DNA from: Lytechinus pictus
Taxonomy: Eukaryota
Assembly (NCBI RefSeq): GCF_037042905.1
Contig: NC_087247.1
Coordinates: 1,550,001 to 1,614,000 of the forward strand
DNA length: 64,000 bases
Reading direction: 5' to 3'
Shown here: piece by piece, positions 2,156 to 61,528 of the stretch
Layout: every line of letters starts with the position of its first letter
Position numbering within the stretch: the stretch's first letter is position 1
Program-made: the position numbers and the translations under genes
The notes under the pieces: model-generated
Databases searched by the model: none
Told to the model about the DNA's origin: nothing
What the model saw: only the letters and a program-made list of their open reading frames with translations

Positions 2156-2260
2156 TATTACCAATGTACAAAGAATACCAATGAGTGGAATACAAACCAA
2201 GAAGTTCAGATATATGACCAAGTGCAGTGTTTTTGGTTATGCTATGTGCAGTAGATACAG
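2156..2260 (+). CDS. Gene A (EMI-domain type I receptor), internal exon with central EMI part: ITNVQRIPMSGIQTKKFRYMTKCSVFGYAMCSRYR
   Basis: Pyrimidine tract plus ttgcag acceptor; AG|gtaagt donor; 105 nt, phase 2-2. The Y..C.....C..YR motif matches the equivalent exons of genes C and D. Confidence 0.85.
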
Positions 2261-2402
2261 GTAAGTGAATAAGTGAAATACAATATCCTGTTCTCGACTA
2301 ATGGGACATCGCAAGAAACTAGCAATAAATAGCTAGTCACTGTTAAGTCCTAACATCAATCACAAGTCTTGTAATGGATTAAAAATGTACAATTGATTGC
2401 AG

Positions 2403-2746
2403 GGGGCCGTTTCATGAAGCTGTTCGTAAGCTAAGAGCGACTTTAAGAACGACTGGCGATCCTTTCTTACGCGCTAAACCATCGCAAATAAATATACCCT
2501 TTATCATAAGAAAGGATCACCAGTTGCTCTTAACTTATGAACAGCTTTATGAAACACCCACCTGGGGGCCGTTTCATAAAGCTGTTCGTAAGTTTAATTT
2601 AAAGAGCGACTTTAAGAACGACTGGTGATCCTTTCTTGTGGTGAGTGGTATATTCATTTACGATGGTTAAGCGCGTAAGAAAGGTTCACCAGTCGTTCTT
2701 AAAGTCGCTCTTATCTTATGAACAGCTTTATGAAACACCCACCTGG
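2403..2746. mobile_element. Two tandem copies of a short palindromic MITE; relatives at about 11930-12113 and 58970-59535
   Basis: tttcataaagctgttcgtaag ... cttatgaacagctttatgaaa inverted arms. Confidence 0.75.
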
Positions 2747-3321
2747 TCTGTTTCTCAACAAGTATCAATTTATTTACTTTAGTAATACAAATTGATCTCA
2801 TCACTTGTGAATTTTCAACTGAACTTTGCAATTGATTGCAAATATTTTCTTGCAACACCCCTATGTCCTCTAAATACTGAACTTTATGTCGGGAACAATG
2901 TCGAAAGAATATTTTATCATCGACTCACCAAGGGGAAGGTGAAAATGTTATACAATATTATAAAGAAAAAATATCGCATATAAAAGGACGGGAGACGAGA
3001 ATAGGGAATAAAACAGAAATCACAATGAAGGAAGAAATATTGACAATACAAATAATGTAGAGTTAAGTATTCACTTCATTGCCCGTAAACGGTGAATAAT
3101 TCAAAGTGTTTAGCATGCGGTATAATACCACGTTGCATGAAACTTTATCTTCGAATTTGATGTCATACAGCTCACTGTGCTTGCACTTGGGCTTTCTTGT
3201 TCCTCTTATCTTAATTTCCTAATCATTTTTTTCATTAATCTATTGAATTTGATATATTCATTAAATTCAGATTTCAGAATGTAACTGTTTTTTTTTTTCA
3301 CTTTGATTTCGCACACGTCAG

Positions 3322-3440
3322 GTTGGTTTACGTGAATGCATTTCGTGAATTGGTAACGACTCAGTACGCTGTAAGACCTGGCTGCTGTAAAGGCTACGTT
3401 CAAGATGGTACTATGTGTCTGGAGGCGCCACCAACGACAA
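3322..3440 (+). CDS. Gene A exon with C-terminal EMI part: LVYVNAFRELVTTQYAVRPGCCKGYVQDGTMCLEAPPTT
   Basis: cag acceptor and gtaagt donor; phase 2-1; CCxGY...C motif; in frame with both neighbouring exons. Confidence 0.85.
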
Positions 3441-3539
3441 GTAAGTTACAATCTACCTTAGATTTCAAGACAAAAGACAATATAATCTAAGCAAGTCAGG
3501 CGGAACAAGGTTGAATGTTTGTCGAAAATAAATTTCGGG

Positions 3540-3835
3540 TGTTTTCACACTGCGACGCAGAACGAATTCAAGAACACACTGAATGTATAAATGCCCGTCA
3601 AATGACAATGAACAGCTGGGAGGTCATGGTCGAAATTTGTGAACCAAAACAGCAGTTTCGTCCTCAGCTGACTGAGCTGACGAATAGTATTACTAAAATG
3701 TCGTTTGTCAAGCATCCAGGACGAAACTGCTGATTTGATTCATCAATTTTCGAAAGAGACTGCTTGGTTTCTCTTTGTCATAAAGGATATTTTCTGTTTC
3801 TTGAAAAGCTCTGCGTCGCCGTGCGAAAAATCCGT
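3540..3835. repeat. Dispersed MITE-like repeat, second copy at about 32985-33260
   Basis: Shared gacgca..gaattcaa..acac and tccaggacgaaactgctg.tttgattca.caattttcga; cgacgcaga / tctgcgtcg inverted ends. Confidence 0.7.
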
Positions 3836-4959
3836 ATCGTCTCTATCGCACGTCAAAGTATTCGAGGGTAAACATAAATATTCGATAGAAACCACAACCT
3901 GTCCGTCCTATTCGTGATGGTATGTGTACAGCCACAGTCTCATCGACTCTATTTTGACTGATAGGCCTTGCATTGTGAATAATGGCATAGATTTGATAGG
4001 TCTGCAATCGATTTCCTCGGTGTGACTACGGTTTAAGTCAGGCAACGGTTACCAGGCAGGAAAGTGGGATGATGTCAGAAGACCCGACAAGTTAGAACAC
4101 ACTACCGGATCTGCAGTCAATTATGCCTCCAGTCTCGTCAATAAGAACATGGATGATGTCAGGGCAGACGAAGAGTGGGAACACACTATACGGATCTGTA
4201 GTCAATAATGCCCCTGGTCTCGTTTTAAGAACACGAATGATTCAGTTTCCTCTGACTCGCTTCTGAACCGTGAATGTTAGTTCCACATCTCTCATCCCCC
4301 TTTATCTTGGAGCGAAAGAAGGAGGCACGAACTTCGTTTCAAGAATAGAACAGAGACCCAAAGCCAGTTAGATTCCATACTTGGGGAAGCGAAACCTACC
4401 ACATGAAGACACGTACGTTTGTTTAGAATTCTGATGATTTATCTTTTGGAAAAGAACGAAAATCTAATGAGACGTAAATAAATAGCTAGAAAATCTAAAC
4501 AATAATTATCTAAAGTGAACATTTATAATTTCTTTGAAACATTCCAATGTGCCAGAAACATCTTATAAATCTTTCCATCATTCTGATACAAAATACACTC
4601 CAAATATACTGAAATGTTTGAATTCGTGATGTTTAAAACAAATCTCATCAACATAAACTAATAATTTTTAGGAAAGCTAAATCGTTATCCGGTTATCCTC
4701 ATGGAAACATATCACATGATTCAGCTCGATGTCATCGTTAGAATAAGGTTAGAAACTGTAATATTGTTATGATCTCATGTAGATGAGATTTTGTTTATGA
4801 TGATTCAAAATGTGATAGATTTCACACATGTTGGATCTCATTGGGGTTATAGGGGACAGGTATGAGTCTATCGTTCAGCACCTATTTAGTAACAGATGAT
4901 ATTAGGAACAGTTTATTCGGTATGACGCTTGGGAGTGACTCGAGATATGGGTCCTTTGT

Positions 4960-5205
4960 CAAATAGGAACGTTCGAAATAACAAATGCTCTAGAAGTGTT
5001 CTAGATAGGAAGTGGTTTGGAAATGTTCTGAGTAAAAAAATAAATTCTGGACTAGAAAATGTTCTAAATAATATATGCTCTAGAATAGTCCTGAATAACA
5101 CCAATACAAATGCTCTAGAAATGTTCTAAATAATAAGTGCTTTGGAAGTGTTCTGAATAAAAAAGAAATGTTCTAGAATGTCCCAAAACAATCGCTCTAG
5201 AATTC
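4960..5205. repeat. Degenerate minisatellite (tgctctagaa..tgttctaaata units)
   Basis: Recurrent ctagaa and tgttct motifs. Confidence 0.7.
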
Positions 5206-5946
5206 CAAGACAAATTTACTCTGGGTGAATTTTATATTATATGTATTCAGCAATCCGGAATATTTTGGTTGCAGGGACTGAAACTACTGGAATACTTTGA
5301 TCTGATATTACATTCGACTATATGTATTTCTTGATCATAAACATAATAGAGGAGCGTCCAAAGACCATTTTCTTTTAAAAAAGACAATAAGGTGCTCAGT
5401 GATAAAAAAAAGGGGCTACATATCGTGGACATATATAAGGTAGAACATATTCATATAAAAATTCAAACAACATGAAGAGTATCATCTGATATAGGCCATT
5501 TAAGAACCTTTATACGATTGCAAAAGCCCGACATATTTACATGATCCTGGCGAAGTCCAATTGGTAGTTCCATGGAAAATAATTTCCATGGAAATTTCAT
5601 TCTGTATTCTTAATATTTTACTAACTCTCATGAACTACGTCTGCAGTTAATTTGCTTTTAATGGTGGCACGATCGACTGTGGTTTCCTCTATTCCATGAC
5701 AGGACCCTTCTATGGAAGAAAGATTGTCTCTTCTTGTTTTGTTCGTAGTGACTTTACACTTGGGAATTATCGTTACTAATTTGAAAGGATGTCTATAACT
5801 TTCAACATTGTTTTGATCTTGTATCGCACCAGGGTTCCATGTACCATAACCACAATGAGGTCAGTATACTTTTGCTTGACTAACATTGGAAAATGATTTG
5901 ACATGATGTATGCTTTAATTCTTGCACCCCCCCCCCCCTACTCCAG

Positions 5947-6286
5947 TGCCTCCTCAGACGTCCACGAGAAGCCCGACGACAGTCAGAACACAAACAGTGA
6001 GGGCGCCTTTCGGCGATGTGTCTCCCAGAGGATCTTCGGGTGGCTACCCTATCAAGGAAGGCTCTGGAGTGTCTAAGGGCCAGTCTGGTCATCGCGATGA
6101 GGTACTCATAGATCAGGAAGGAGGCTACTTTGAGGTGAATCCTGATTACAAGGGGCCGGCTGTGGATCGAGTGTTGCCTCTGATTGCGTCTGGTGTTGCA
6201 GGGGTCATTACCCTGACCGCTGTAGTAGCCTTCGTGCTGATTTTCATCAGTAGGAGGAAAAGGAAGCGCAACAAGGTCCAACCTGG
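5947..6286 (+). CDS. Gene A exon: Ser/Thr/Pro/Gly-rich stalk, TM helix (VLPLIASGVAGVITLTAVVAFVLIFIS), basic stop-transfer RRKRKR
   Basis: Lies in ORF 5922-6290; ctccag acceptor and gtaaga donor; phase 1-2. Confidence 0.88.
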
Positions 6287-7689
6287 GTAAGAATTCGTCC
6301 CCATTAGCATCCACGATGAAATCTAACATTCATTTTTAAGTTAATGCGACTTGCTCGTCGTGATTTGCTATTTAACAATTTGGTTTGAAAAAAAAAAAGG
6401 TTGAGGAAAAAAATCCTATTATTAAAATATTGCGGGAATGTGGGCATAGGTTTAGAACACTTATGCTTCATCTGTTTTATGAAAGAAAATCTGCAGATAA
6501 TTAACCAATTAACGAATTAGGGAATGTTAATATGCTTCCGATGAGGATGATATATACGGCTTTTTTTTTCTTGTTATTCTACATTTTGCCGAAAGACTGA
6601 TCTGTTCCCGATCCCTAGATAATCATTTTGCGATTAAAACAGATGCATGTTCAGTTTTTAGAATATGTATTTATGTTGACAAGCGAGAAACAACATGAAA
6701 AAAATAACAGGTTGGGATTAAGAGATATGAGGCTCCCTTTGCACGACTTCTATCGAGAAACCGTGTTAAACTCAATGGCTACGGAAACTTACTGGTTTCT
6801 GTATTAATGAAAATGGAAGTGAGAGAAGCTGGTTATCCATGTGCTAAAAAAGATGTAAACGATTCCTCCAAATAGCTGGGAATTATACTTAGAGTCGACC
6901 ATCACACTATTGGGAAGCCAGTTTTTGCATATAGAGAGGTAAGGGACGGATCAAGGGAAACTTCTAGTCGAAAGGTTATTTTGTAGGCGGCAACTGCCCC
7001 CTCTCCATCCCCAGCATACATCGCTTTAGTCCTAATTGACTCATTCGCCACTATCGCAAATTATCATTCTCAAAGTCAACGCCGTTGCCAATTCCCGAAA
7101 TAAACCCGATCCTATCTAATCAAACTATTATTCCGACACCCCTTATCCCTCCTACCAACTCCCTGTCGTTTTTTAAATCACCTGTTTCTTTTAACCATTT
7201 CCATTGTTTCCGCAATTGTTTCAACGGCACGTATTAGAGCCCCAGAGAATGATAGACACTAATCCATAATGTCTGTAGATTTCCAAATTAATACTTGGCT
7301 ACATTTATATACAGTATGATAAATCTATAACACCTGCTTTTAAGAGTACGTGTGTGTCTAAAGAAGAATTTTATTACTCATCAAAGTATTCCCCAGAGGC
7401 ATTTCTAAAATACACTTTTGATGACGATGGTTTTTTTTAAGACGTGATATTCTTTAAAATGGAAAATAGATTTACAATGGAGTTCAATTTCTTAAACAAG
7501 CATTGTCGGAATGATGAGGCCCAAAGCAAAACAGTGAAATCGTGACATCGCAGTGAGTTTATCGTCATGGTGGCAATACAATTTTGTTTTTCGTTATAGA
7601 ATGTAGATAATGTCGCGTATTTTGAATAATCACTTTATCCTTCATTTTCCTTCCCTCATCCTTTTTGTTTTCAATTTCTATGTTCGCAG

Positions 7690-7856
7690 ATTTCATGACT
7701 CTGTTCGGTTCCGAACTAACCACCAGCCGAAGGATACGACTAAGCTCGAGATGAAGAGAATGTCAACAGAGAAATCATCAGCACACGCCTTAGCGCTTGC
7801 TGTCACTAATCCAAACCCCAAGGCATCCAATAAATTCAAGAGATTGTCTCGAAAAG
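7690..7856 (+). CDS. Gene A short cytoplasmic exon (FHDSVRF...KRLSRK)
   Basis: Long pyrimidine tract plus cgcag acceptor; weaker gttaat donor; phase 2-1 links the TM exon to the last exon in frame. Confidence 0.75.
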
Positions 7857-8936
7857 GTTAATAATATTATTTATGTATTTACATGAGATGAATAAGTACA
7901 ATTACAAGTCTTCTTATCTTCTTGTCTTGAACCGAATAGAACGACTTAATTTTATTTTATTGTGATTATGATTGATTTTTAAATTTCGCATTTTCTCCAC
8001 TCTCGATTTAGAAATGTACATCAGATTATAATCATGTATTCATAAACATAACAATTACTGAACAGAGTTTTCTAGAGTGAGGGGGACAACTGAAATAAAG
8101 CCATATTACATAATTCAAGCACGGTGATGTAAAACATTTATAAAGTACAAAGTATAACAAGGAGATAGAAGGGAAAATATATGCAGCTAATGAACACAGA
8201 CACGAAATTCATGATTTCAAGGCATAAGAATTTAAAAGCTGCTATAAATCTGTATCAATATTGAACAATTAGCTAAAAAGGTAAAAATAGCTGTTTCCTT
8301 TAAATCAGGAGATGGCGCGCTTCAAGACAGTAAACAGAACAAGTGAAGCATCCGACAGATAAAGACAAAAATTTCGTTGTGATCTCTGGGGATGGGACAG
8401 TCCGGGGGGACAGTACCTGTCTGACAAGTTAGAGGCAAAATCAGGGGGGGGGGTAGGAACTCGAATTTTGATCTGGTGATACATGTATCAGATCAAAGAA
8501 TACACGGACGAAAAACAAACAGGTAGGATGCGATTTCAGAGCAGGACCTGGTGTTAGATAACTGCAGAGGGCGCAATGGCAGCTCTTGACACAGCGACAT
8601 AAGTATTAAATTGGAACAGGATTTGGAAAGACTCAAGCAAACGTATTTAAGACACTGTCTCGGTCGTCTTTATCGAGACAGTATTTTCTTTATAATTTTT
8701 TTTCTTGTTCTCCTTTTGCTTAAATCATGTATATTAAACACATTAGACATGCTAGAGGTCATAATCGACGATATGCCAACGATGTTGTAATGCAATCTAA
8801 ATTTATATTTAATCTAAAGATGGAAGTGAGAAAGTGTTGCTTTATTAGAAAGATGGAAAGTTAATTTTACTTGTCATAATGCAATTCTTAAACTATTTAA
8901 ACTCTTTTGTGTCTGTTTTTTTCATGTCTTCTTTAG

Positions 8937-9784
8937 ATGGACCTTATGTGGAAATATCGGATATTCCGGGAACACCGTTCGCGAGAGTCACCTCAAAGAC
9001 GGAAGAGACGATACGATCGGATCTACAAAACAACCAAGTACACGCTGCTTTCATCAACAACAGAAGAAGTTTGAACGAATCCCAACGAAAACAGAGAAGT
9101 CCCGTGAAGCGTGGTGGCTCAATGAAGATTGTTCCCCAATACGCCGTGGTCAACAAGCTAAGAAAACCTGACACCGACTGCGAAGAGCTGTTGGACGCCA
9201 AGAATAGCCCTAAAAATAACAACGACGCAGAGGACAACCTCCATGGAGCTTACCACGCCTTTACCCTTGAACATCAAGTTACTGGAGATTCAGCCCCGCT
9301 GTATGCAGATCCCAATCAGAAACAACAGAACAAGTCAAGAACGTGGGCTTGTCGCGTTGGTTCAAGTCTGAAGGAGAATCGTGTCAAAGGTGTGGGTACG
9401 CTCACACCAGGGAACGTCTTAGCTCTGGTGAAGCAGAGCAATCTTCGAGAAACATCCAAACTCTTTACGAGCTGCGGCGATGGGGTCGGGAACCGCCGCC
9501 TCTCGTCGGGTTATACAAACAAAGATGATGATTCAGAAAACTCGAGTGGATACAGCTCACTCCGTCACAGCATTGAGGGGGAACCGGACATGTACGGGAA
9601 GTTGAACCATGCTACCAGTGTAAAACCCTCAAGTCCGCCCGATACCAAGGGTCAGACAGCTGCGTTAGAAGCAGCAGACGTCAATGACTACGATAAACTC
9701 AGACGAGGTCCCAAGTCGAGAACTCTGGGGTTGAAATGGGCAACATCAGGGCATTACGAGACCTTAGACGTTGATGAAACATGA
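8937..9784 (+). CDS. Gene A terminal exon: Tyr-motif cytoplasmic tail (YVEI, YAVV, YADP, SGYSSL, YGKL, YDKL, YETL)
   Basis: Lies in ORF 8879-9784; tctttag acceptor, phase 1; ends at TGA. Confidence 0.85.
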
Positions 9785-21893: not shown

Positions 21894-21939
21894 GTGAGTG
21901 TTGATAATTCATCATGGATCTTATACCAGTTTAGATCTA

Positions 21940-47192: not shown

Positions 47193-47239
47193 TAAAAGTA
47201 GAGAATAAGATCAACTTTGTCTAGGAACGTATTCGAAGT

Positions 47240-50540: not shown

Positions 50541-50633
50541 CGAGAAACAGACGATTAGCGCGAGAGTAGCACACTACCGGAGGTACCTTACCTACAGCCG
50601 CTGTTGGATATTGTTTACATGCACGAAATACAG
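50541..50633 (+). CDS. Gene D central EMI exon (SEKQTISARVAHYRRYLTYSRCWILFTCTKYR)
   Basis: ctttag acceptor and gtaaat donor; 93 nt, phase 2-2. Confidence 0.87.
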
Positions 50634-50794
50634 GTAAATGTTTTAACCAACCCCATAGTTAAAATACGAAACAATCAATTGTTCCCTTTTCTTTTCCTTT
50701 TTTTTATCCTAGTACAGCATGCATGAAAGTTTGGTTAAAAGCAAAGTTGGTTGAAAAAAATATGAGAGTAAACGCTTCGAAGACTTGGCAAAAA

Positions 50795-52749
50795 CAGGGG
50801 CGTAACAGGGGTAGATGGCCGGGGGTGGTGGCAAGAGAAAAAAAAAATCCCGGTCATATCATGGTATGAGGATTTTTTAACAAATTTGCCCGAGCATTAG
50901 GGCGAAGCTTATGCATGATAAGTACAAAAAGGAGGGGCACAGCATGGCGCGCACAACAAAAAGTTGCTTGATTTTAGTCCCGAGCAAGCGAAGCAAGCGA
51001 GAAAAAAAAATATTTTCATGAGAATGTAACTTTGAGATTGATTTTCAGAAAGCAACATATCTTACATTTTCTTTCCATTTATTTCACCTTTTCGTTTTTT
51101 TTCCTCGGTTTTATAAATTTTGATGGCCAGTGCTATGCGGATCGGATCCGGGGCAGTGGCGGCAAGTTTTAATCTAGGGGAGGCAAACAAATATTTGGGG
51201 GCAACACACACAATTTTTGCCTATTACACAAACACGAGCGAGAAGTGCGAGCTATTTTTTTTTTTTAATGCAGGCCCTACTGACTTGAAAATGGACCTGT
51301 TAATGACTAGCTGTTTGCAGTGGGTCATGAAGATGATATCTCACCAAATAGATAATGCGAGCTGAAATTTTTGGATATCCTGAGATGATAACTCGACCGT
51401 TCTAAGCACTTTTTTAATCATAAACTGGAAGGCTATCTAACTAAACAACTGATGCGAGCGCGTAGCGCGAGCTGAAAATTTTGTATTAATGAAAACGCAG
51501 GATGTGTATCTCGCTAAAACGAATAATGAAAACTCTTATCGCGAGAACCATATTTAAGCCCCGTGTGAACAGATAATTTACTTATCTCAGGCAAAAGTTA
51601 CTGCGAGTGCGAGCGAAATTTTGAATTTTATATAATGACCTGAAAGATTTATGTTAGTGACTAAAATTCTGTGAGCTAAGAGCGAATGTATGAGAACATT
51701 TTCAAAATTTAAAGAACGAAAAAGCTGTTTTGGAGCAATTTGCTGCTTTAGTAGCATGCTTATTAAAACATGGCTATACATTTTTACATTTTCAAAATTT
51801 TGCATGGGGGGGGGGGCAAATGCCTCCCATTCATCCCCCTTGTTGCCGTCAGTGGTCCGGGGCGGAACCCTCGGAACCTCGTGATGGTTTTAAACATTTT
51901 AGATGGCCACTTCTTTATAAAATCGCGGGTACATATACCACATAATAATTTCAACGCAGTTGCGGATAATAAACGCAGTATTGTGAAGCAGCACAACATA
52001 ATTTAGCAAATGTAAACTTTGTAAATAGTCGCCGGCGAGCGAAGTGAGCGGGAAAATTTGGCCTTTTTAAATCATTTTGATATCAAATTCTAATGTGATA
52101 GTAGCTTTGGAAATGTAGCCAAAGTAAACATAAAGTGGCTTTTACAGTAAATCTAACAAGCGTAAAGCTTTACTTAGGCTAGAACATATTATAAGGGGAT
52201 ATAACTAGCCCTTGGCTAAGGATTTTGTTCGTCCTGATTACGACCATCGTTGCGTAAATTCACCAAGCTTATAATAGACGCCATTCACCTTTCTTCCCGT
52301 TCTTTATATTTTTCGATCCTCGGCAGCCCGGTCGTAAGTTCTTTTATTTGTTTCCCCTTTTCTTCATATTTTGATTTTCTGATTTTCCAATTAAGCTTTT
52401 GGCACTTTCTTCATTTCCTGTTTCTTTTTTAATCTCTCCCATTTCCCCGCCATTCCTGCCCGTGCCATATTGAAAATCTTTTTTTTAATTTTATATCCCT
52501 CTCTTGGTTAAAGTGATAAATAGTATTTCAGGATATTTTGTACTTTCTCACATGTTTTTCTTTGCTTTCCTTTCCCGCTTTCCTTCCGTTTTCCCTATTT
52601 ATGTTCTTTCCTTTTTTTTCTCTTTTTTCATTCCCTTTCTCTCTTACTCCCTTTTCTCAACTTCCCGTGTTTTTATTTTCCCGGAGAAATCCGCCGGGGG
52701 GGGGGGCAACTTGCCCCCCTCCCCTTGCCCCCCGTTTGTTACGCCACTG
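50795..52749. mobile_element. hAT-like non-autonomous element in a gene D intron, containing a nested hAT-like MITE at 51154-51854
   Basis: Outer TIR caggggcgtaaca / tgttacgccactg with ggcaaaaa / ggcaaagg flanks; inner TIR cagtggcggcaa / ttgccgtcagtg with atccgggg / gtccgggg 8-bp flanks. Confidence 0.65.
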
Positions 52750-53210
52750 GGCAAAGGTTTATTAATAAGAATACAACGTTCTTCTCTAAAATCATAAATT
52801 TATGACGTCCCACGCGAGCAGCTGGCCCATGATAGGTTCTGTGAATCATCATGAATTTCGTGGTATGCCATTCTATTTTAGTGGTATGCCATTCTATTTT
52901 TGTTCTCATCCAATAGAACTGAACCTTTTACGAATGTTAATGATTTAAAGAAACAATAAAATCTTAATATCGTTAGATATCATTTAAGTACAGAATCGAA
53001 CATGATTATTTGGTACTTAGAATATAACGTCTCGGATTGGTGATTATCACCGAATACATTATGATGTAAATGCATGAACTGATTTTACACGATACTAAAT
53101 GAAAAAAAAAAAATAAGTAAGGTTACCTATGATTGCGTAGTACATGCGACCTTACTTTAAACGCGTTTGATTGTCCCTGGAAAGCCTACCGATTCTCTTT
53201 TTTTTAACAG

Positions 53211-53326
53211 AACGAGATTAGTCTACTGGATAAGATATCAACTTGTTACAAAGTACTTTACCAAGCTTATTTGCTGTGAGGACTACAAATGGGATTCGGA
53301 ACAGAGTTTATGTCTTCCAATAACGG
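53211..53326 (+). CDS. Gene D C-terminal EMI exon (TRLVYWIRYQLVTKYFTKLICCEDYKWDSEQSLCLPIT)
   Basis: taacag acceptor and gtaagt donor; 116 nt, phase 2-1. Confidence 0.87.
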
Positions 53327-53610
53327 GTAAGTCAAGGTTATAGATCTAGGATTTGAGTCCCAGAGATGTCCATTGCTGTGCGGTGGGGTCCGAATACAAT
53401 TCCATTAACGAACTACAGGGTGTTCAATGTAGATTACACATAATCACACGGGGTTAATGAAATTATAATATAAGCTAAGCTTCGATGGTATGAGAACGTT
53501 TGCCAAGCTAATTTTTCGGATTTCAAAACGAAACTTACAAACAAGCAAATAGATGGACACAATAATAACCTACTAAGGGAAGAAGGAATTGTATGTTTTT
53601 TTAAATTCAG

Positions 53611-53794
53611 TTCCAGATGACCTGTCGACTCTAACCGTGACAACAGAAAGTTTACTTACTGGTCCGTCTCACAATCAAGTACCTAATGTCATAATCAGCA
53701 TTATCGTCGTCATCATTGTCGCAGTATCGATCGCATTGGTCTGCGTGGTGTATCGACGTCGTAGAGCTCACAGGATACAGACGAAAGTTCATCA
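53611..53794 (+). CDS. Gene D short stalk plus TM exon (VIISIIVVIIVAVSIALVCVVY, RRRR)
   Basis: Lies in ORF 53589-53798; ttcag acceptor and gtaagt donor; phase 1-2. Confidence 0.87.
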
Positions 53795-54144
53795 GTAAGT
53801 GCCTATCAGTTAATTATTTGTTTTATTTCACCTCCTTTATTGTGGGCGCGTAACCCATTGCCGTCTTACTTCAAAAACAGGATGACTTTTTTTCGTAACG
53901 ACAGGTACCCAGATATGAATACTCGACATACTTTTTTCTGACAAAAAAATAATCTTCCGGTTCCTTTTATTGGATCAGTATTACCGGTGGATGAATAGAG
54001 GGCTTTACATATTTAAATTACTGTCGATTGTGCATTAGAAAATAAAGATTATGTCGTGTATGCGTTAGAGTAATTGTCGTATTCGAAAAAAAAATAGAAA
54101 ATCCATATCATATTGTTGAAACAGAAATTGCTCAATTAATCTTG

Positions 54145-54322
54145 GGCCCGTCAGCCACTGAGCAGCGCCAGATCGACGTTGCTCTATCCAAGAAATTATT
54201 TGAAAGCCAAACAGGGTAGCAGTATTTCCAATATCTTAACGACTTTTGGTCTGCCGCGACCAGGGTTTGAACTCCCGACCTTCCGGTTGTGATACGGACG
54301 CTCTACCAACTGAGCCAACACA
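54145..54322 (-). mobile_element. tRNA-derived SINE fragment
   Basis: Minus strand reads tggctcagttggtagagcg...gggagttcaaaccc (A and B boxes). Confidence 0.7.
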
Positions 54323-55177
54323 TCAGAATTGTTGAAATTAATTGATTTATCATACCATATCGAGGACATGTTCATTACTTTATTTCGGAAGTGACAGAAT
54401 CATCGTAGCTACAGTTTGTGGTAGCAGTAGCATAGTCGTATAGTATAGTATCAATACTATTCAATTCAATTCTTAATTTCATTTCCATTCAAAACATAAT
54501 ACAAAGTAATATAAAGTAATACAATTCAAGTACAATTTTACAGAAGGGCATTCTTACTTCGTAAAAAAACAAAAAAAAACAGTATAATATAGAGCATAAA
54601 TGGAAATGAGGGGGATCCACTAAAAAGCAAAGCTTGTAAATTGTGGATCCCCCTTAGAAAGGAAGTATAGTAGACTTATTCTCATATGCGTACATATATG
54701 TATTACAGGAAAGAAAAAGAGAACAAAAGAAATCATACGGATGCAAATATAATTACTGAACAAATGCAAAGCTTTTCACACAAAGAGGTCTTCGTAGTAA
54801 AGGATGTGTTGCACAAGACAGAAGAAAGAAAAAAAAACAGAAAGAGAGAGGGGATGACAAGACATAGAAGACAAGACAAAACAAAAGACAGGACAGTACA
54901 AGACAAGATAAACATGCATGCATGTACAAGACAATATAAACATGCATGCACAAGACCAAGTGGACACTACACTAACTTTTTGTTACAACACACACTGTTA
55001 GAAATAAAACTGTACCAAAATAATAATAATTATTATTATTGGCAGCTGGGACTAAAAAACAGTATGAACTGTTAAATTACGATGGGCTGTAAAAATGCAG
55101 AAATACTGGATAACTGTAAAAAGAAAAAAAAACACTATTGTAACATTAATTTAACATGAAAATCGCCGTTAATTTAC

Positions 55178-56363
55178 AAACAAGTGGAATGCCTCTGGCG
55201 GTCTCACCTGCATCACGCGATTCAATATAGCAGCAGTGCTGACTTTGAAAGCTACTATAAAATAATTATTCACAAAAAACACCATTCATATAATGATTCA
55301 ATACTACGTTCATTGATATTTGACTTTGATCATGTGACTTAAAACTTGTCAGTGATACTTGATTACCCCTATATCCACATTTTATACACTATATCTATAT
55401 ACTGTGAAAGTTATGACAGCAATCTAATAATTACCTCTAAAATTACCAAAGTTCAATTACCTTAAATGACCTTTGACTTTCGTCATGTGACCTGAAACTT
55501 GCATGAAGTGTTCAGTGATACTTGATGACTCTTATGTCCAAGTTTTATGAACTAGACCAATATACTTACAGAGTTATGATGGTAATTCAACAAATACCCC
55601 CAACATGGCCAAAGTCGATTGACCTTTGACTTTCGTCATGTGACCTGAAACTCGCACAAGATGTTCATTGATACTTGGTTACTCCTATGTCCACGTTTTA
55701 TGAACTAGACCAATACACGTACACGGCTTTGATAGTAATTCAACAAATACCCCCAACATGGCCAAATTTCATTGACCTTAAATGACCTTTGACCTTGATC
55801 ATGTGACCTGAAACTCGGACGGGGTGTTCAAAGATACTTGATTACTCTTATGTCCAAGTTTCATGAATCAGATCTATAAACGTTCAAAGTTATGATGGTA
55901 ATACAACATATACCCCAATTTGGCCAAAGTTCATTGACCCTAAATGACCTTTGACCTTGGTCATGTGACCTGAAACTCAAGCAGGATATTCAGTAATACT
56001 TGATTAACTTTATATCCAAGTTTCATGAACTAGGTTCATACATTTTTTAAGTTATGATGACATTTCAAAAACTTAACCTTAGGTTAAGATGTTGATGTTG
56101 ATTCCCCAACATGGTCTACGTTCATTGACCCTAAATGACCTTTGTCCTTGGCCATGTGACCTGAAACTTAGGCAGGATGTTCAGTAATACTTGATTAACC
56201 TTATGGTCAAGTTTCATGAACTAGGTTCATATACTTTCTAAGTTATACTGTCATTTCAAAAACTTAACCTTCGTTTAAGATTTGGTGTTGACACCGCCCC
56301 GGCCGCCGCCGTCGGAAAAGCGGCTCCTATAGTCTCACTCTGCTTCGCAGGTGAGACAAAAAA
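55178..56363 (-). mobile_element. Helentron/DINE-like non-autonomous element with an internal array of roughly 120-180 bp repeats
   Basis: Subterminal inverted repeat gtctcacctgc (55201) / gcaggtgagac (56347); extra inverted gtctcac at 56332; gcctctggc hairpin near the other end; A/T-run flanks; repeated gacctttgaccttggtcatgtgacctgaaactc units. Confidence 0.7.
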
Positions 56364-56482
56364 GGGACACTATTTATACAATAAATGCACTGCAATTAAC
56401 GGAAAAACAGGATAGTTATTTTATATTTTTACAAAGATAATCATATTTTACTTCGTTTTACATTTAACTTGTTACATATCAC

Positions 56483-56685
56483 CATAGGCGGCGGAAGATT
56501 TTTTGCTGATAACCTTTTTTTTTTTTTTTTGCTTGTCAAAAAATGTTGGTGATCCCCCCTAAAATTTAGGTTGATAATCTTTTTTTTTGTTTTTTTGTTT
56601 TTGCTTGTCAAATTTTTTAACCGTGTCCATCCCAAAATTTCGGGTGGACCCCCCCCCCTTATTTTTTTGGCTTCCGCCGCCAATG
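56483..56685. mobile_element. hAT-like MITE
   Basis: TIR cataggcggcggaag / cttccgccgccaatg; perfect 8-bp TSD catatcac. Confidence 0.8.
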
Positions 56686-56888
56686 CATATCACTGCATAA
56701 ATACATTTGATTTGTTAAATCATTGTGTCGTCTGTTTTTAAAAGGTAAACATCCTGTAAATTTACGATCTTTCTTTGTAAAATTACTAGTATCTTTATCA
56801 GTGCAGCCAGTACACAATATCTTCAATAATTGTTTTAACTTTTTGTTCATTTTATGCAATTGCATACCTTTTTCCTTCAAATTTCCAG

Positions 56889-56935
56889 AGCCTTGCAGAT
56901 GAAACATCTGAAACACTCGGACATATCAGAAGCAA
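56889..56935 (+). CDS. Gene D cytoplasmic mini-exon (ALQMKHLKHSDISEA)
   Basis: ttccag acceptor and gtaagt donor; 47 nt as in gene C; phase 2-1. Confidence 0.75.
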
Positions 56936-57314
56936 GTAAGTACAATGAACGCTCAAATACACCCAGTAACGTATTTTCGTTATTTTGAAACGTGTCAGAG
57001 CTTGTGTTATGTCTACATTGTCATGTTAACAACACTGAACATTGTATTATAAATAGATAATCTATTACAAGTTTGTGTTCACTGGTTTTGGTTTACGTAA
57101 TTATTATTAAAAAAAATTAAGAGAAATGTTGACACTTCAGGTTAAATATTTTATGAGAACTTATACGCTTGTATAATGCAAAAAATCCATTATTTCAAAT
57201 GCATGCGTCTTTGACAATGCTGTTTAAGGTATATTTGACGAAAACACGATTATTGCCAAAATTCGAATTATTTATTTTACTCTGCCAATTAAATTTCCTT
57301 TTATAAATTCCTAG

Positions 57315-57697
57315 CCCTAACCACAAAAGCTGCAAAACCAACCGAGAAGGTAGATGGACCAACCAAGAACTCCCGCGTAACACATAAGCAGGATACAGAC
57401 GCATGCATCGACAACAGATCCTGGCAGGCTAACCAATCTAGTGTCAAAGATAAAATATATGAAAATTTTCCAGCACACTCTTACATGGACAAGATAATTT
57501 CCTCTGGTAAGAGAGTAGGCCTGCCTGACAATGGTGACGAAGTTGATGAGAAACCATCGAGCTCAGCTGTCGCCGACGGAAGCTTGCATGTGTACGAGTA
57601 TTGCTGCATCCAAAGTAACACCATGACACCCAGCTCCGGTTGCCGAGAGGGCGCTAGACAAGGAGTGTACGAAGCAGTAGGCGACCTACGGTTTTAA
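57315..57697 (+). CDS. Gene D terminal exon: short tail (IYENF, VYEY, VYEAV); spliced CDS 927 nt = 308 aa
   Basis: cctag acceptor, phase 1; open into ORF 57485-57697. ACID, SYMD, EVDE.PSS and EGA...YE.VGD align with the gene C tail. Confidence 0.75.
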
Positions 57698-58209
57698 TGC
57701 ACGTGATCATCTGAACAAAAGCTCTGGAACGAATACAGTAAACATGTTGTATTATGTGAATATGTAAAAATAGAATATCAAGCACCCTTTCGCAGAGAAA
57801 GAATAGGGGGGTTGATGTGTGTGTGTATGTGTGTGTGTGTGTGTGTGTGTGCGAGTGAGAGAGAGGGAGGATGAGGATTCATGGTCTTCTTTTAATACAG
57901 GGGGGCACTTTTGTAAGCAATAGAGCGAAGCAAACTAGTAAGCAATGAACGTATTTTTGTAATATTCATCTTTTATGGTTGACGAAGAAGGATCTGATGC
58001 ACACTTCTCCAAGATTTTTGTATAAACTAGCAAGAACCCCCCCCCCCAGTCCTATGCTTGAAAACAAATAGAAATTGAAGTTCTATGTCATGCTTTATAA
58101 GTCACGATCATTCTCAATAAACATATGAAACATAACCCATGTTTTTTTTTTCTTTTGCAGTATGACTAATGTGGGTGTGCGATTGTGTGCGTAAAAATGC
58201 GAGGGTGGA

Positions 58210-58400
58210 GGTGCCGTGGCCGAGTGGTCTAAGGCGCCTGGCTATACATGGAAAGTCCGGGGTTCGATCCCCGGCCGCGGCACCTATGACCGTGAGCAAG
58301 GCATTTAATCTCCAATGCTCTTTTATTCTGCCTTCAAATAAATGGAAATGCTATATGCATTATTGGTAACTAGGTGTGCAATTGTTTGTTTAAAAAAAAA
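58210..58400 (+). mobile_element. tRNA-derived SINE (tRNA-like head 58210-58284)
   Basis: A and B boxes, paired acceptor and T stems, unpaired anticodon stem; followed by gagcaaggcattta core and an A-rich tail. Confidence 0.7.
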
Positions 58401-59120
58401 AAAGGTGTTGGTTCATGTATGTGTGGTAGGTTTGTGTGAGGTTTTGCGGAAGTGTTGGTGGGTTTGTGTTGATGTGCTGGTGAGTGCATTGTTTGTGATT
58501 GTGTATTGCATTTGACGGATGTGAAGTACAGATCATTGAAAAAAAAATGTTATCTCGAGATAAATATGCTTTTGGGGGGGGGGGTTCAAGGAGGAAAGAC
58601 AACACTGAAAATTACTGATATTTACGGCATAAACTGTTGTTCACATATTGCTAAAACTGATATTCGGTATTAACTCATAAAAACTTACAGACAGGTGGAA
58701 CATTATATTGTAATATGGATTAAATAAATCCTCCAAGAAATTATGGAAACAGATTTATGATTTTAACATATATCATGGATAAGAGCTGATGTGAAAAAAG
58801 AGAAAAGAATGGTAATTCAAAGGTTTGCAAAGAAAAATTGAAAATATGAATACAAGAACGAGACAATTAGGCTAAGGGATATTCATTTCGAGAATACAAA
58901 ATTTGTCCCATGTCTTAGTCTATTTTGTTTTCATTAAATTCGTGCGCTTTTAATGGAATTCAGGAGCCAGGGTGTCTCATAAAGATGTTCGTAAAGTTTC
59001 GCAGGACTGAGCGCATGACTGGAACATGTTCTTAGGAGCTAATGCAGCTACATACTACATAGAACTATATATACTATGTTGCACGAGAAGTGGTCATCAG
59101 TCGTAAGTAAAGTCATACCT

Positions 59121-59512
59121 AAAGCCCGCATCACACTTATTCCGAATCAAGCATAATTGGCCTGAATGAAAGGACTATTGTTTGACCACCAGTTGGTCAT
59201 TTAAATCTACTTCGAACACCGTTCGAAAATATCCCGAAATGACAAAAATATTTCGAATGCACTCAAAATGCAGTAAGGATATTTAGAATGCCCCTAGAAT
59301 GTCCAAGAACGTAGCACGAATTATCAATCTGACTCCATTGCGGTTCATTTTGACTAGTGTATGGTGATACACCTGGTCAATTTACTGAATTTCAACTCCA
59401 GTTTGGTGAATTCATAAGTTCCTCCCAAAAATTTCTAGATTTTTTAAATATTTTTTCTTTCCAGCTTCTGCTTGATTCCTGCTGATTCCGAATAAGTGTG
59501 ATGGGGGCTTAA
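59121..59512. mobile_element. PIF/Harbinger-like MITE nested in a palindromic MITE
   Basis: aagcccgcatcacacttattccgaatca / tgattccgaataagtgtgatgggggctt inverted ends with TAA/TTA-like flanks. Confidence 0.6.
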
Positions 59513-61433
59513 CTTACAAATAGCTTTATGGAACGCACAACCGGATATAAATCAAAGACATCATGGGCTCACTCTATGAAAATACCCCGTCAATGCCCCC
59601 CTGACAATTTACAAAGGTTTTTTCTTCTTCTTCTTCATTATTTAGTTAATTCCAGTTCGGGTTTTGAAGAGTGCTAACAGGTAATTGCCAAATTAAAAGC
59701 CCTGAAAATAAATGATCCGACAAAAATAACGAATTTTCATACAATCTAATCGGCAAAACAGTAACATTTATCACTTTATTCAATTCAATGCAATTAAAAA
59801 TCAATATCATCGTTGAGTTATGCAAGAAAAAAGCACAAAAAGTAATGGCTTATTAAATAATCTTTATTAAATAATCTGCGAATAAAGTTTTTGAATGTCT
59901 TTTTTGTCGGTCCATACTATTTGGAATGCATATCAATGTTAATTTTTCATTACCAACGTTTAAAACAGAAACTTAAAAGAAAATTAAAATTTGTTTTAAT
60001 TATCCAGGCATTATTTGGTGGCGTTCATTTCTTTCATGTTTTTTTATTTTGTTAAATCAAATTTGCTGATCTTTCAGATTGTCATGATTGCATTCCAGGG
60101 AATCATGAAAAGGGAAAATAAATGAATAAAGATTATCATAATCATACAAACACAGATGTGATGGAAAAAGTATGGACCATAGAGATGTTACTCTCTGGTA
60201 CGCACCTACGACATGTACGACGCCCCCTACCGACACGAAACTTGTTGTCTCCCTGTCAACAGTTCAGGTTCAGCAAAATAATGCGTTGCTGTCGTCGTAT
60301 TTTGACAGAGAGAAAACTATATACATGTAGAGAAGTACACTAAACTAGTCGAGATTTGACAGACTTTTGCATACACTTGCTCTTCGTGCACCGGAACCCT
60401 TGAATTCATTTTAACGTTCGTATTGGATGTGACTTTTACCTGGAGCTGAAACTGAGACGTATCTTCTGACGATACGAGATATAAGATCCATTCTTTGATG
60501 CAGGGGTGAAATTGTGTAGAGGAATACTTGTGATTTGTGAGGAATCATTTTCCGTGTAAGTTAATGTCACTCTTTTACCACGTATTCCCATGTCAATGAA
60601 TGTCAGGTTTAGTACGTTAATATTTATGGATTGATGTTTTATCCAATCATGTATGTTTCGGTATTAAAAAAATCAAAATAATCAGTCTTTAAATCATGTA
60701 AATAGTATTTTGCTTATTTTTAGCTTTCTCAACTTTTTACATAATTATTATAGCCATCATGGTCATAAAATTATTTTGTTTTTCACTGGTATTAAAGTTT
60801 GAAACTTTTTTTAGATGTTAGTATACAATCGATGATATCGAACACATTTATTTATTTCGGCCAATGAAAGCTTCTGATATAAATAACGCACAAAAACTTT
60901 TCATGGAGTTTTCTTTCATGACAAAATCTTTTCCTGGATTTTTTTGAGCTTTTTTTTTTAGAACCAAGCTGATCAAGATCTATCGGGTTCACTAATATAT
61001 CGTAAAATCATTCGGGTTTTGCATTTCACGTGTCACTATTGGCATATTTGGCAGTTTATGTGCTTTTTAGCAGACACAATAAAAAGAAAACCAATTGAAA
61101 CTTGAAAGTCTTATAGTTTATAATAGACTTATACAGTTGTTGATATTTTCTCTAAAGATTGATGAGCCATATGTTGTGCACGACACAGGTCTTGTACACA
61201 TTTAAGATGCTGCTAAATTGGTGGACTTTAGGCATAGGAATCGTGCAACAATAATTAATTCACTTTCACTAATCTGACAATAATTTCAATAACCATGATT
61301 ACTTTACTCCCGATAAAATCTGAAATGTATACTTCTATCTCACACTATCTTTTACAAAAAAGGTAGTTTTCACTGAGGTTAAACTACCTACACACCTTGC
61401 AGCCACCGTCGTTTCCAGTTCCCAAGGACCATC

Positions 61434-61528
61434 ATGTCATTTCGGAAAGCCACTTCCCTGGTCTTTCTCATCACGTGTGTGTCTATTGCCCATCCTTTGT
61501 CAGGCTCCAACGTTTGTACCTCATTAAG
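61434..61528 (+). CDS. Gene E first coding exon: signal peptide plus LSGSNVC start of an EMI domain (MSFRKATSLVFLITCVSIAHPLSGSNVCTSL)
   Basis: ttgcag acceptor ending at 61402; atcATG start; AG|gtaaga donor, phase 2, a few codons after the Cys as in genes B-D. No downstream exons found in the window. Confidence 0.65.

What the first reader, a model, noticed from the sequence alone, without database searches (positions are those of the whole stretch)
2156..61528. Tandem cluster of at least five EMI-only, Tyr-tailed type I receptors: candidate undescribed variable immune or engulfment receptor family
Seen: five co-oriented paralogs. The complete ones share a six-exon plan and phases 2-2-1-2-1 and encode signal peptide, a ~80-aa Cys domain (C..CxxxxxC..YR..CCxGY..CLPI), S/T stalk, one TM and a Tyr-motif tail. 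Established: this Cys pattern with CCxGY is the EMI module at the N-terminus of CED-1/Draper/MEGF10/Nimrod phagocytic receptors, where EGF/NIM repeats follow it. Here EMI is the only folded domain. Inference: a locally expanded, fast-diverging recognition-receptor family organised like paired-receptor clusters. The EMI domain is split over three exons of about 100 nt, so ORF-based annotation would mostly miss it.
Basis: partly seen in the sequence, partly recalled or inferred. Interest (0 to 1): 0.9.

Follow-up and report, generated by a model that had tools for sequence, protein, structure and literature searches.

The report
EMI-only tyrosine-tailed membrane receptors, sea urchin
This Lytechinus pictus window holds a conserved cluster of four single-pass membrane-protein genes with one EMI domain outside the cell and a long tyrosine-motif tail inside, which are uncharacterised likely signalling receptors but a small family, not a large variable one.

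Summary
The observation largely holds. The window is Lytechinus pictus chromosome DNA.

**Genes present**
- Four co-oriented genes (A, B, C, D) encode signal peptide, an EMI-like Cys domain, an S/T stalk, one TM helix and a Tyr-motif tail.
It belongs to a neighbouring gene that has an EMI-type CCDGW exon plus EGF exons and runs beyond the window, so it is not EMI-only.

**Gene structure**
- Spliced transcript contigs from two studies show all five GT..AG junctions of gene B.
- My models of B and C match NCBI proteins LOC135153487 and LOC129257971, so annotation does not miss these two.

**EMI call**
- Pfam EMI is below threshold for the window's genes (C 14 bits, B none; cut-off 25).
- Profile-profile comparison to echinoderm proteins that pass Pfam EMI gives E 6.9e-12.
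- The top 27 Foldseek hits for the AlphaFold model are all EMI domains, led by Draper, CED-1 and MEGF10/11.

**Family size and evolution**
- A whole-genome search finds only B, C and D. A search of 1.84 billion proteins finds 12 hits.
- Close relatives are sea-urchin proteins where the source is named, and gene order is shared with Strongylocentrotus purpuratus.
- EMI is the fastest-diverging part and the tail is conserved.
- The tail has no NPxY. It carries ITAM-, ITIM-, YxN- and YxxM-format motifs.

Function is inferred and untested. No paper on the family was found.

The parts
2156..9784 (+). Gene A, the divergent member. Exon 1 was not found. Exon 2 is 2156-2260, exon 3 is 3322-3440 (CCKGY), the stalk+TM exon is 5947-6284, and the tail exon is 8937-9781 with stop at 9782-9784. 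An intervening small exon is implied by the phases but was not located.
   Evidence: Motif and TM scans and splice-site reading. The tail closely matches the end of the S. purpuratus 584-aa 'EMI (weak)' gene that lies upstream of the 605-aa gene.
17831..24486 (+). Gene B = LOC135153487. Exons 17831-17937, 20102-20200, 21136-21251, 21575-21893, 22764-22801, and a last exon from 23705 (486-aa form) or 23423 (580-aa form) to the stop at 24484-24486. Exon 2 lacks both central EMI cysteines.
   Evidence: Spliced Logan contigs in X5 and X1 carry all GT..AG joints. The translations equal P0009 and P0005.
23417..23982 (+). In-frame tandem duplication of 282 bp (96.5% identity) in the last exon of B. 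It duplicates the 3' splice site and the YALV / YEN / YTEV module.
   Evidence: Self-blastn. The joint 22801->23705 and a contig starting exactly at 23423. Both isoforms are annotated.
29044..36714 (+). Gene C = LOC129257971. Exons 29044-29141, 30889-30981, 31905-32020, 32577-32928, 34397-34443, and a last exon from 35300 or 35567 to the stop at 36712-36714. NCBI isoforms add a 5' exon ending at 27219.
   Evidence: The model reproduces P0001 and P0002. Genome search hits fall exon by exon.
35237..35771 (+). Tandem duplication of about 267 bp (92% identity) in the last exon of C. Its boundaries differ from the one in B, and it gives two in-frame acceptors at 35300 and 35567.
   Evidence: Isoforms P0001 (long) and P0002 (short).
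50191..57697 (+). Gene D. Exons 50191-50294, 50541-50633, 53211-53326 (CCEDY), 53611-53794 (short stalk + TM), then inferred exons 56889-56935 and 57315-57697. The tail stops before the ITIM/ITAM-format region.
   Evidence: tblastx to B and C, splice and frame reconstruction, motif scan. No matching annotated protein appeared. The expression test was inconclusive.
61434..61528 (+). Exon 1 (signal peptide + 'NVC', phase-2 donor) of the neighbouring EMI+EGF gene. The rest of the gene lies beyond the window (L018:4659-4772 CCDGW exon; EGF exons L018:6381-6548, L018:7003-7293, L020:1341-1640).
   Evidence: The homologous first exon belongs to the S. purpuratus 534-536 aa EGF gene.
43390..48472 (-). 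Non-LTR retrotransposon between C and D. It has a 914-aa ORF2, a 410-aa ORF1 with CCHC-type spacing, and a 165-aa 3' piece. It is not part of the family.
   Evidence: ORF list. The LINE identity is read from the ORF sequences and was not profile-tested.

Best explanation
**What it is**

A to D are a small family of single-pass type I membrane proteins. The close relatives whose source is named are all sea-urchin proteins.
- Each has a cleavable signal peptide.
- Each has one EMI domain as its only folded ectodomain.
- The EMI domain sits on a Ser/Thr-rich, probably O-glycosylated stalk.
- One TM helix follows, then a long disordered cytoplasmic tail.

**How it most likely works (inferred)**

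I read them as phosphotyrosine-signalling receptors or scaffolds.
1. The EMI domain binds a ligand or self-associates.
2. The receptors cluster.
3. Src-family kinases phosphorylate the conserved tail tyrosines.
4. SH2 proteins dock on those tyrosines:
   - a Syk/Shark-type tandem-SH2 kinase on the YxxL-x11-Yxx(L/F) pair;
   - an SHP-type phosphatase on LTYDH(L/I);
   - Grb2 on YEN;
   - PI3K p85 on the YTDM and YTEM motifs of the C lineage.

**Likely origin (inferred)**

The genes probably arose beside an EMI+EGF gene of the MEGF/Draper kind, by loss of the EGF exons. The B/C/D group then duplicated in Lytechinus.

**Shown versus inferred**
- Shown: gene structure, transcription and splicing of B, the EMI fold assignment, disorder of stalk and tail, conservation of the motifs, and faster divergence of EMI.
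- Inferred: membrane topology, phosphorylation, binding partners, ligand and biological role.
For: **Structure and transcription**
- Spliced contigs give all five introns of B.
- My models match the NCBI proteins.

**EMI assignment**
- Pfam EMI aligns over positions 3-69 of 69 at sub-threshold scores in C and in the S. purpuratus orthologs.
- hhalign between the family and proteins that include two passing the Pfam EMI threshold gives probability 97.5%, E 6.9e-12.
- The AlphaFold model has pLDDT 82.6.
- Its top 27 Swiss-Prot Foldseek hits are all N-terminal EMI domains, with Draper, CED-1 and MEGF10/11 first. The AFDB cluster search agrees.

**Architecture**
- In the full-length model only EMI and the TM helix are structured.
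- A TM segment followed by an Arg/Lys run is present in all four genes.

**Tail**
- Seven tyrosines are invariant across the seven aligned family proteins, including the Diadema member.
- The writer-reader logic for Draper and MEGF10 tails is described in PMC8092387.

**Ectodomain divergence**
- EMI identity is 86%, 65% and 74%, against tail identity of 93%, 87% and 99%, in C vs L. variegatus, B vs L. variegatus, and S. purpuratus copy 1 vs copy 2.
- Between the S. purpuratus copies, EMI has dN 0.148 and dS 0.128, and the tail has dN 0.004 and dS 0.012.

**Neighbour.** An EMI+EGF gene lies next door in both species.
Against: **No functional evidence**
- There is no direct evidence of surface expression, phosphorylation or ligand binding.
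- YxxL/V motifs can also act as endocytic sorting signals, and short Tyr motifs arise easily in acidic disordered tails.

**Weaknesses in the EMI and tail evidence**
- Pfam EMI is below its gathering score for the window's own genes, and B gives no hit at all.
- C's second ITAM-format tyrosine sits in YDVF, which is not canonical.
- NPxY, present in Draper, MEGF10 and CED-1, is absent.

**Expression**
- Two deep rRNA-depleted RNA runs (6% sampled) showed no exon reads for B.
- The tissues of the expressing runs are unknown.
- D may be a decaying copy: Gly to Asp at an invariant site, a truncated tail, and no annotated protein found.

**Model quality.** The structure alignments are shallow (11 and 7 sequences).
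Confidence: 0.55

Rival explanations
1. The proteins are engulfment or immune recognition receptors in the narrow sense. They would be expressed on coelomocytes, and a rapidly evolving EMI tip would recognise microbes, dying cells or non-self.
For: The closest fold matches are Draper, CED-1 and MEGF10/11. The tails carry ITAM- and ITIM-format motifs. EMI is the fastest-diverging region, with omega about 1.2 between the S. purpuratus copies. An EMI+EGF gene is the immediate neighbour.
Against: There are no expression data by cell type. The family is tiny. B and C each have a single close L. variegatus counterpart. NPxY and the EGF/NIM repeats are absent. In the S. purpuratus EMI exons dS is raised together with dN, so the pattern may reflect an old haplotype block or missing gene conversion and not positive selection.
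Confidence: 0.2
2. The proteins are adhesion or cell-cell recognition molecules, for example gamete, embryonic or matrix-binding proteins. EMI would act as a multimerisation or ECM-binding module, and the tail would serve mainly in trafficking and cytoskeletal anchoring.
For: EMI is described as a multimerisation and protein-interaction module in ECM proteins (PMC10381214; PMC8092387). The mucin-like stalk is typical of adhesion molecules. Fast ectodomain evolution also fits reproductive proteins of sea urchins (my own knowledge). YxxL/V can be a sorting signal.
Against: Seven tyrosines, with their +3 hydrophobic context and acidic surroundings, are invariant across the seven aligned sea-urchin-type sequences. 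That is more than trafficking would need. The YxN and YxxM formats point to SH2 docking.
Confidence: 0.15
3. Part of the cluster is non-functional. D, and possibly the Cys-depleted B, would be decaying duplicates, and the apparent fast evolution would be relaxed constraint.
For: D has Asp at the invariant Gly of CCxGY, a very short stalk and a truncated tail. It matched no annotated protein, and a LINE lies just upstream. B lacks two of the six cysteines. Omega is near 1 in the S. purpuratus EMI exons.
Against: B is transcribed and correctly spliced. Its reading frame and tail motifs are intact, and the same Cys loss is kept in the L. variegatus B-like protein. Both cysteines were lost together, as expected if they formed a disulfide with each other. 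D keeps open frames and consensus splice sites in all predicted exons.
Confidence: 0.1

Closest known systems
CED-1 / Draper / MEGF10 / MEGF11 / PEAR1 (Jedi) engulfment-receptor family
   Same: Type I topology and an N-terminal EMI domain, which is the best structural match. The cytoplasmic tail has ITAM/YxxL-type tyrosine motifs read by Src and Syk-family kinases in Draper and MEGF10 (PMC8092387). A gene of this general EMI+EGF build is the immediate chromosomal neighbour.
   Different: There are no EGF or NIM repeats at all; EMI joins directly to a mucin-like stalk. There is no NPxY. The tail has no detectable sequence homology outside this family. The proteins are much shorter (about 320-730 aa against more than 1000).
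Other echinoderm EMI-stalk-TM-tail proteins: S. purpuratus XP_030855402 ('endochitinase A-like', UniProt 'EMI domain-containing protein', 721 aa), L. pictus LOC129270311, Amphiura filiformis XP_072019829
   Same: The architecture is the same: signal peptide, single EMI, S/T/P-rich stalk, TM, and in the two long proteins a long Tyr-containing tail. EMI profiles align at E 6.9e-12.
   Different: They are separate families. Their tails are unrelated in sequence, and two of them pass the Pfam EMI threshold while the window's genes do not. None is characterised either.
EGFL7 / EGFL8 and EMILIN / multimerin (secreted EMI proteins)
   Same: They share the EMI fold.
   Different: They are secreted matrix proteins with EGF, coiled-coil or gC1q domains, and have no TM segment or signalling tail.
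Vertebrate multi-motif transmembrane scaffolds and paired immune receptors (my own knowledge: LAT, SIT, KIR and SIRP-type clusters)
   Same: A single TM, a disordered tail studded with SH2-docking tyrosines, and tandem gene arrangement. One copy (D) lacks the distal motifs.
   Different: There is no sequence relation. The ectodomain is EMI, not Ig or lectin. D's TM has no charged residue for adaptor pairing. There are only three close paralogs.

Membership tests
EMI domain (Pfam PF07546) | Score at or above the Pfam gathering threshold (25 bits) | tested here: not met
   C scores 14.0 bits (E 0.09) and B gives no hit. S. purpuratus orthologs score 19.0-23.7 bits. Where a hit is reported, the alignment spans profile positions 3-69 of 69. 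Single exons give nothing.
EMI domain (Pfam PF07546) | Homology to bona fide EMI domains by profile-profile comparison | tested here: met
   hhalign of the family EMI alignment A3 against A4 gives probability 97.5%, E 6.9e-12 over 76 columns. A4 includes P0014 (35.1 bits) and P0015 (30.9 bits), both above the Pfam cut-off.
EMI domain (Pfam PF07546) | EMI fold | tested here: met
   The AlphaFold model has pLDDT 82.6. The top 27 Swiss-Prot Foldseek hits and the named top hits among AFDB clusters are N-terminal EMI domains. No solved EMI structure matched in the PDB, so this compares prediction with prediction.
EMI domain (Pfam PF07546) | Conserved Cys framework with CCxG[YW] | tested here: inconclusive
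   C and the S. purpuratus orthologs have C1, C2-x5-C3, CC-x-G-Y and C6. A's exons 2-3 have C-x7-C, CCKGY and the last Cys, but its exon 1 was not found. B and its L. variegatus counterpart lack C2 and C3. D has CCEDY.
CED-1/Draper/MEGF10 engulfment receptors | EGF-like or NIM repeats following the EMI domain | tested here: not met
   In A-D the EMI exon splices directly to the stalk/TM exon. No EGF family appears in the Pfam scans. The stalk is unstructured in the model. Only the neighbouring gene E has EGF exons.
CED-1/Draper/MEGF10 engulfment receptors | NPxY motif in the cytoplasmic tail | tested here: not met
   The regex scan found no NPxY in the tails of B, C and D, A's tail exon, or the family members from other species.
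CED-1/Draper/MEGF10 engulfment receptors | ITAM or YxxL motif in the tail | tested here: met
   YxxL-x11-YxxL is present in B, its L. variegatus counterpart and the Diadema protein. C has YGVL-x11-YDVF. Both tyrosines are invariant in alignment A1. The match is in format only; phosphorylation was not tested.
CED-1/Draper/MEGF10 engulfment receptors | Role in engulfment of corpses or debris | not testable with these tools
   This needs cell-type expression data and loss-of-function assays.
Paired activating/inhibitory receptor cluster | Short-tailed member with a charged TM residue for adaptor pairing, alongside long-tailed ITIM members | tested here: not met
   D lacks the distal motifs, but its TM segment has no charged residue. 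D's transcription is unproven.
Large variable immune gene family | Many paralogs or copy-number expansion in the genome | tested here: not met
   Protein and profile searches of the whole 812-Mb assembly hit only B, C and D. The exhaustive library search found 12 proteins.

The most novel reading that the evidence does not exclude
The EMI tip is a polymorphic recognition surface kept diverse by selection, coupled to an invariant ITAM/ITIM-type tail. That would make it a sea-urchin self/non-self or pathogen-sensing receptor built on a domain not previously used alone for recognition. In S. purpuratus the two copies are 74% identical in EMI but 99% identical in the tail, and they may be alleles or copies about 500 kb apart. 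Loss of the EGF exons from a Draper/MEGF-type neighbour would then show how a minimal receptor is carved out of an engulfment receptor.
Probability: 0.15. Interest if true: 0.8.

Novelty: new variant of a known kind. Interest (0 to 1): 0.5.

Why it matters
EMI domains are known as the N-terminal cap of multi-EGF engulfment receptors and of secreted matrix proteins. In these genes EMI is the only folded ectodomain of a membrane protein that has a conserved multi-tyrosine tail.

- **A minimal test system.** If these proteins signal, they would show what an EMI domain binds and whether it is enough to trigger a Draper-like tail. L. pictus has a chromosome-level assembly and, to my knowledge, can be bred and edited with CRISPR.
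- **Origin.** The cluster sits next to an EMI+EGF gene, which gives a concrete case of how domain loss may create a new receptor type.
- **Limit on the claim.** The result removes the idea of a large variable family. The family is small and shows conserved gene order between two sea-urchin genera.

Tried and rejected
- **Pfam on single EMI exons.** Nothing useful; the exons are too short.
- **PDB searches.** Neither sequence nor Foldseek gave a significant match. Only generic long beta-hairpins of pore-forming toxins appeared, at E above 0.07, and I dismissed them as chance.
- **'Sema4F_C' Pfam hits.** These cover only the TM and basic juxtamembrane segment and are below threshold, so I rejected them.
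- **Atlas search with the tail.** Best score 0.75, which is not informative.
- **A fifth EMI-only copy in 57741-64000.** tblastn, motif and TM scans found none. Only exon 1 of the EMI+EGF gene lies there.
- **A second EMI-like hit downstream, about 12.5 kb past the window end.** Spurious on inspection.
- **Expression of D.** The query stretch was too long and contains a repeat shared with another species. Shares of 0.10-0.11 are inconclusive, and no read-laying run was left.
- **Raw RNA runs X9 and X10.** They gave no exon reads for B at 6% sampling. This is not evidence of silence.
- **L. variegatus DNA for dN/dS.** No record was found, so only protein identities are given for that pair.
- **Logan contigs for gene A's tail.** They carry upstream non-coding sequence, so they do not show splicing.
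- **Spliced D and A proteins.** They have no reference id, so I did not submit them to Pfam or structure tools.
- **Literature searches.** Nothing was found on this family.

Full report
**Organism and genes.** A protein search with the last exon of gene C returned 100%-identical NCBI models from Lytechinus pictus.
- Gene C is LOC129257971.
- Gene B is LOC135153487.
- Both are named 'uncharacterized protein'.
- The window is G000:C3:1550001-1614000 of an 812-Mb assembly.

**Checking the observation.** Six-frame motif scans found CCxG[YW]-type exons on the + strand at about 3383, 21197 and 31966, and a CCEDY variant at about 53300. tblastx between sub-regions showed that B and C are clear paralogs (1.4e-110) and that D is related to both (3.6e-23 to C).

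I rebuilt the gene models from splice sites and paralog alignment.

- Logan contigs from two studies (X5, X1) carry GT..AG joints at 17937|20102, 20200|21136, 21251|21575, 21893|22764 and 22801|23705.
- One 846-nt contig spans exons 1-5.
- Another contig starts exactly at 23423, the equivalent acceptor of the first copy of a 282-bp tandem repeat.
- No second genomic copy exists, so these contigs come from spliced RNA.

My B translations (486 and 580 aa) equal P0009 and P0005. My C translation equals P0001 minus an annotated 21-aa N-terminal extension. The six-exon plan with phases 2-2-1-2-1 therefore holds for B and C.

D follows the same plan through exon 4. Its exons 5 and 6 are inferred.

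It has an EMI-type exon pair, a stalk/TM exon (5947-6284) and a Tyr-containing tail exon (8937-9781). The intron phases that can be read (2, 2, 1, 2 and a phase-1 last acceptor) match the family.

**The fifth copy.**
- In S. purpuratus the homologous exon is the first exon of an annotated 534-536 aa gene that contains a CCDGW exon and EGF exons.
- In L. pictus the same CCDGW exon lies 4.7 kb beyond the window end.
- Exons that pass the Pfam EGF_2 and EGF_laminin cut-offs lie 6-12 kb beyond the window end.
- The fifth member is therefore an EMI+EGF gene, not EMI-only.

**Is the Cys module EMI?**
- Pfam alone does not say so for the window's genes. C scores 14 bits and B gives no hit, against a 25-bit cut-off. 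The alignment does span the whole profile.
- The S. purpuratus orthologs reach 19-24 bits. UniProt auto-names one of them 'EMI domain-containing protein'.
- An exhaustive HMMER search with the family profile found other echinoderm proteins with the same build. Two of them pass the Pfam EMI threshold, at 35.1 and 30.9 bits.
- hhalign between the two EMI alignments gives 97.5% probability and E 6.9e-12 over 76 columns.
- An AlphaFold model of C's domain has pLDDT 82.6 and shows a long beta-hairpin plus short strands.
- Searched against Swiss-Prot models, its top 27 hits are all N-terminal EMI domains: Draper, CED-1, MEGF10/11, EGFEM1, multimerin-2, PEAR1 and the EMILINs. The AFDB cluster search agrees.
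- The PDB holds no matching solved structure.
- I accept the EMI assignment as homology and fold, and note the failed formal Pfam threshold.

**Is EMI the only folded domain?** In a full-length model of C, only EMI (residues 48-121) and the TM helix (196-243) show secondary structure at pLDDT above 50. The stalk (124-195) and nearly all of the tail are below 50. The alignment has only seven sequences, so this is supportive but not conclusive.

**Family size and range.**
- Searching the whole genome with C, and then with the family profile at E up to 1, hits only exons of B, C and D. A is too diverged to be hit, and its tail has no second copy.
- Across 1.84 billion cluster representatives there are 12 hits at E up to 0.001, seven of them strong.
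- The named strong hits are L. pictus, S. purpuratus and Diadema antillarum proteins, and the word-based searches add L. variegatus. The rest are unnamed ENA or Logan proteins.
- Weaker hits are the other EMI-TM families, including one from the brittle star Amphiura.
- Among the hits, B and C each have one close L. variegatus counterpart (identities).
- In S. purpuratus the order is A-ortholog (584 aa), a 605-aa B/C-type gene, then the EMI+EGF gene. This order appears twice, about 500 kb apart. The two copies could be a segmental duplication or retained haplotypes.
- This is a small family with conserved gene order, not a large variable one.

**Divergence pattern.** Percent identity by region:

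| Comparison | EMI | Stalk | TM | Tail |
|---|---|---|---|---|
| C vs L. variegatus | 86 | 96 | 90 | 93 |
| B vs L. variegatus | 65 | 84 | 96 | 87 |
| S. purpuratus copy 1 vs copy 2 | 74 | 95 | 100 | 99 |

- EMI is the most divergent mature region in every comparison, more so than the low-complexity stalk.
- For the S. purpuratus pair I mapped the six exons of both genes and computed Nei-Gojobori estimates.
  - EMI: dN 0.148, dS 0.128, omega 1.16.
  - Tail: dN 0.004, dS 0.012, omega 0.37.
- Introns around exons 2-3 are 80-86% identical, against 95.5% across the 3' 3 kb.
- The 5' block is therefore older, or has escaped homogenisation, and evolves with little constraint. This fits diversifying or balancing selection, but also relaxed constraint combined with 3' gene conversion.
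- Between the L. pictus paralogs B and C, the signal peptide (79%) is more conserved than EMI (50%).

**Tail.**
- Alignment of seven family proteins, including the Diadema one, shows invariant tyrosines in YEN, (E/D)EY, TYDHxDR, YxVL, YDxx, YDxx(D/E/N)R and a YGHL-type motif.
- A motif scan finds the following.
  - An ITAM-format pair (YxxL-x11-YxxL) in B, its L. variegatus counterpart and the Diadema protein. C has YGVL-x11-YDVF.
  - An ITIM-format LTYDH(L/I).
  - YxN sites.
  - YTDM and YTEM in the C lineage.
  - No NPxY anywhere in the family.
- D's predicted tail ends just before the TYDH region and lacks all distal motifs.
- Draper and MEGF10 tails use an NPxY plus an ITAM, written by Src kinases and read by Shark/Syk. 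Draper-II carries an ITIM read by Corkscrew (PMC8092387). The resemblance is in logic, not in sequence.

**Interpretation.** The best-supported reading is a small sea-urchin family of EMI-only type I membrane proteins that act as phosphotyrosine-signalling receptors or scaffolds. They are probably derived from the local EMI+EGF gene lineage by loss of the EGF exons.
- Architecture, transcription of B, the fold and motif conservation are shown.
- Phosphorylation, partners, ligand and any immune or engulfment role are inferred.
- They are not members of the CED-1/Draper/MEGF10 family as defined, because they lack EGF/NIM repeats and NPxY. They may still work in a similar way.

**Novelty.**
- The genes are annotated but uncharacterised.
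- I found no paper on them or on EMI-only membrane receptors in echinoderms.
- I class this as a new variant of a known kind.

**Limits.**
- D's expression is unresolved.
- Spliced A and D proteins could not be submitted to profile or structure tools because they have no reference id.
- The tissues of the expressing runs are hidden.
- Structure comparisons are between predictions.

Noticed in passing
window 23417-23982 and 35237-35771: B and C each carry an in-frame tandem duplication at the start of the last exon (282 bp at 96.5% identity; about 267 bp at 92%). The boundaries differ relative to the acceptor: 6 nt upstream in B against 63 nt in C. This suggests independent events. Each duplicates the 3' splice site and the YA(L/I)x / YEN module, and both long and short isoforms are annotated. 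For B the short junction is seen in RNA contigs.
   Followed up: partly
window 20102-20200: Exon 2 of B has Arg and Lys in place of the two central EMI cysteines. The L. variegatus B-like protein also lacks both, so the loss predates the species split. It fits those two Cys forming one disulfide with each other.
   Followed up: partly
L018:2863-4772, L018:6381-7293, L020:1341-2101 (G000:C3:1616863-1626101), with exon 1 at window 61434-61528: An EMI+EGF gene (EGF_2 and EGF_laminin above Pfam cut-offs) lies directly downstream of D. Its CCDGW exon has the same intron phases as exon 3 of the EMI-only genes. The S. purpuratus ortholog is 534-536 aa. Its exon 2 and 3' end were not resolved, and no TM exon was found within 20 kb.
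   Followed up: partly
L025 and L026 (S. purpuratus AAGJ06000006.1, 16.67 and 16.17 Mb): The three-gene block (A-ortholog, 605-aa gene, EGF gene) occurs twice about 500 kb apart. The 3' halves are near-identical and the EMI exons and flanking introns are strongly diverged. This is either a segmental duplication with partial gene conversion or two retained haplotypes.
   Followed up: partly
window 43390-48472 (- strand): An apparently intact non-LTR retrotransposon lies between C and D. It has a 914-aa ORF2 with endonuclease/RT-like sequence and a 410-aa ORF1 with CCHC-type spacing.
   Followed up: no
window 14622-16446 and 55178-56295: Two arrays of a tandem repeat of roughly 150 bp are related to each other (up to 88% identity). 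One lies between A and B and the other inside the long intron 4 of D. Words from the D region are also held by runs of a second species (organism B).
   Followed up: no
window 19200-20000 and 21959-22376: Intronic repeats inside B attract very high contig depth and many partly fitting RNA reads in all four runs, with loose ends running into other sequence. They are probably transcribed transposable elements present elsewhere in the genome. 19350-19951 is also repeated at 25909-26564.
   Followed up: no
window 3538-3837 and 32992-33271: A short element with inverted-repeat structure lies in the introns after the EMI exons of A and of C (about 70-73% identity, both orientations). It looks like a MITE-like insertion.
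   Followed up: no
window 27091-27219: NCBI isoforms X1 and X3 of C start at upstream ATGs in an extra 5' exon. That puts 21-49 residues in front of the conserved signal peptide. The conserved ATG at 29044 is the more likely start, so the extension may be an annotation artefact or 5' UTR.
   Followed up: no
window 53211-53326: D has CCEDY where all 11 aligned EMI domains have CCxG[YW]. D also has a stalk of only about 25 residues.
   Followed up: partly
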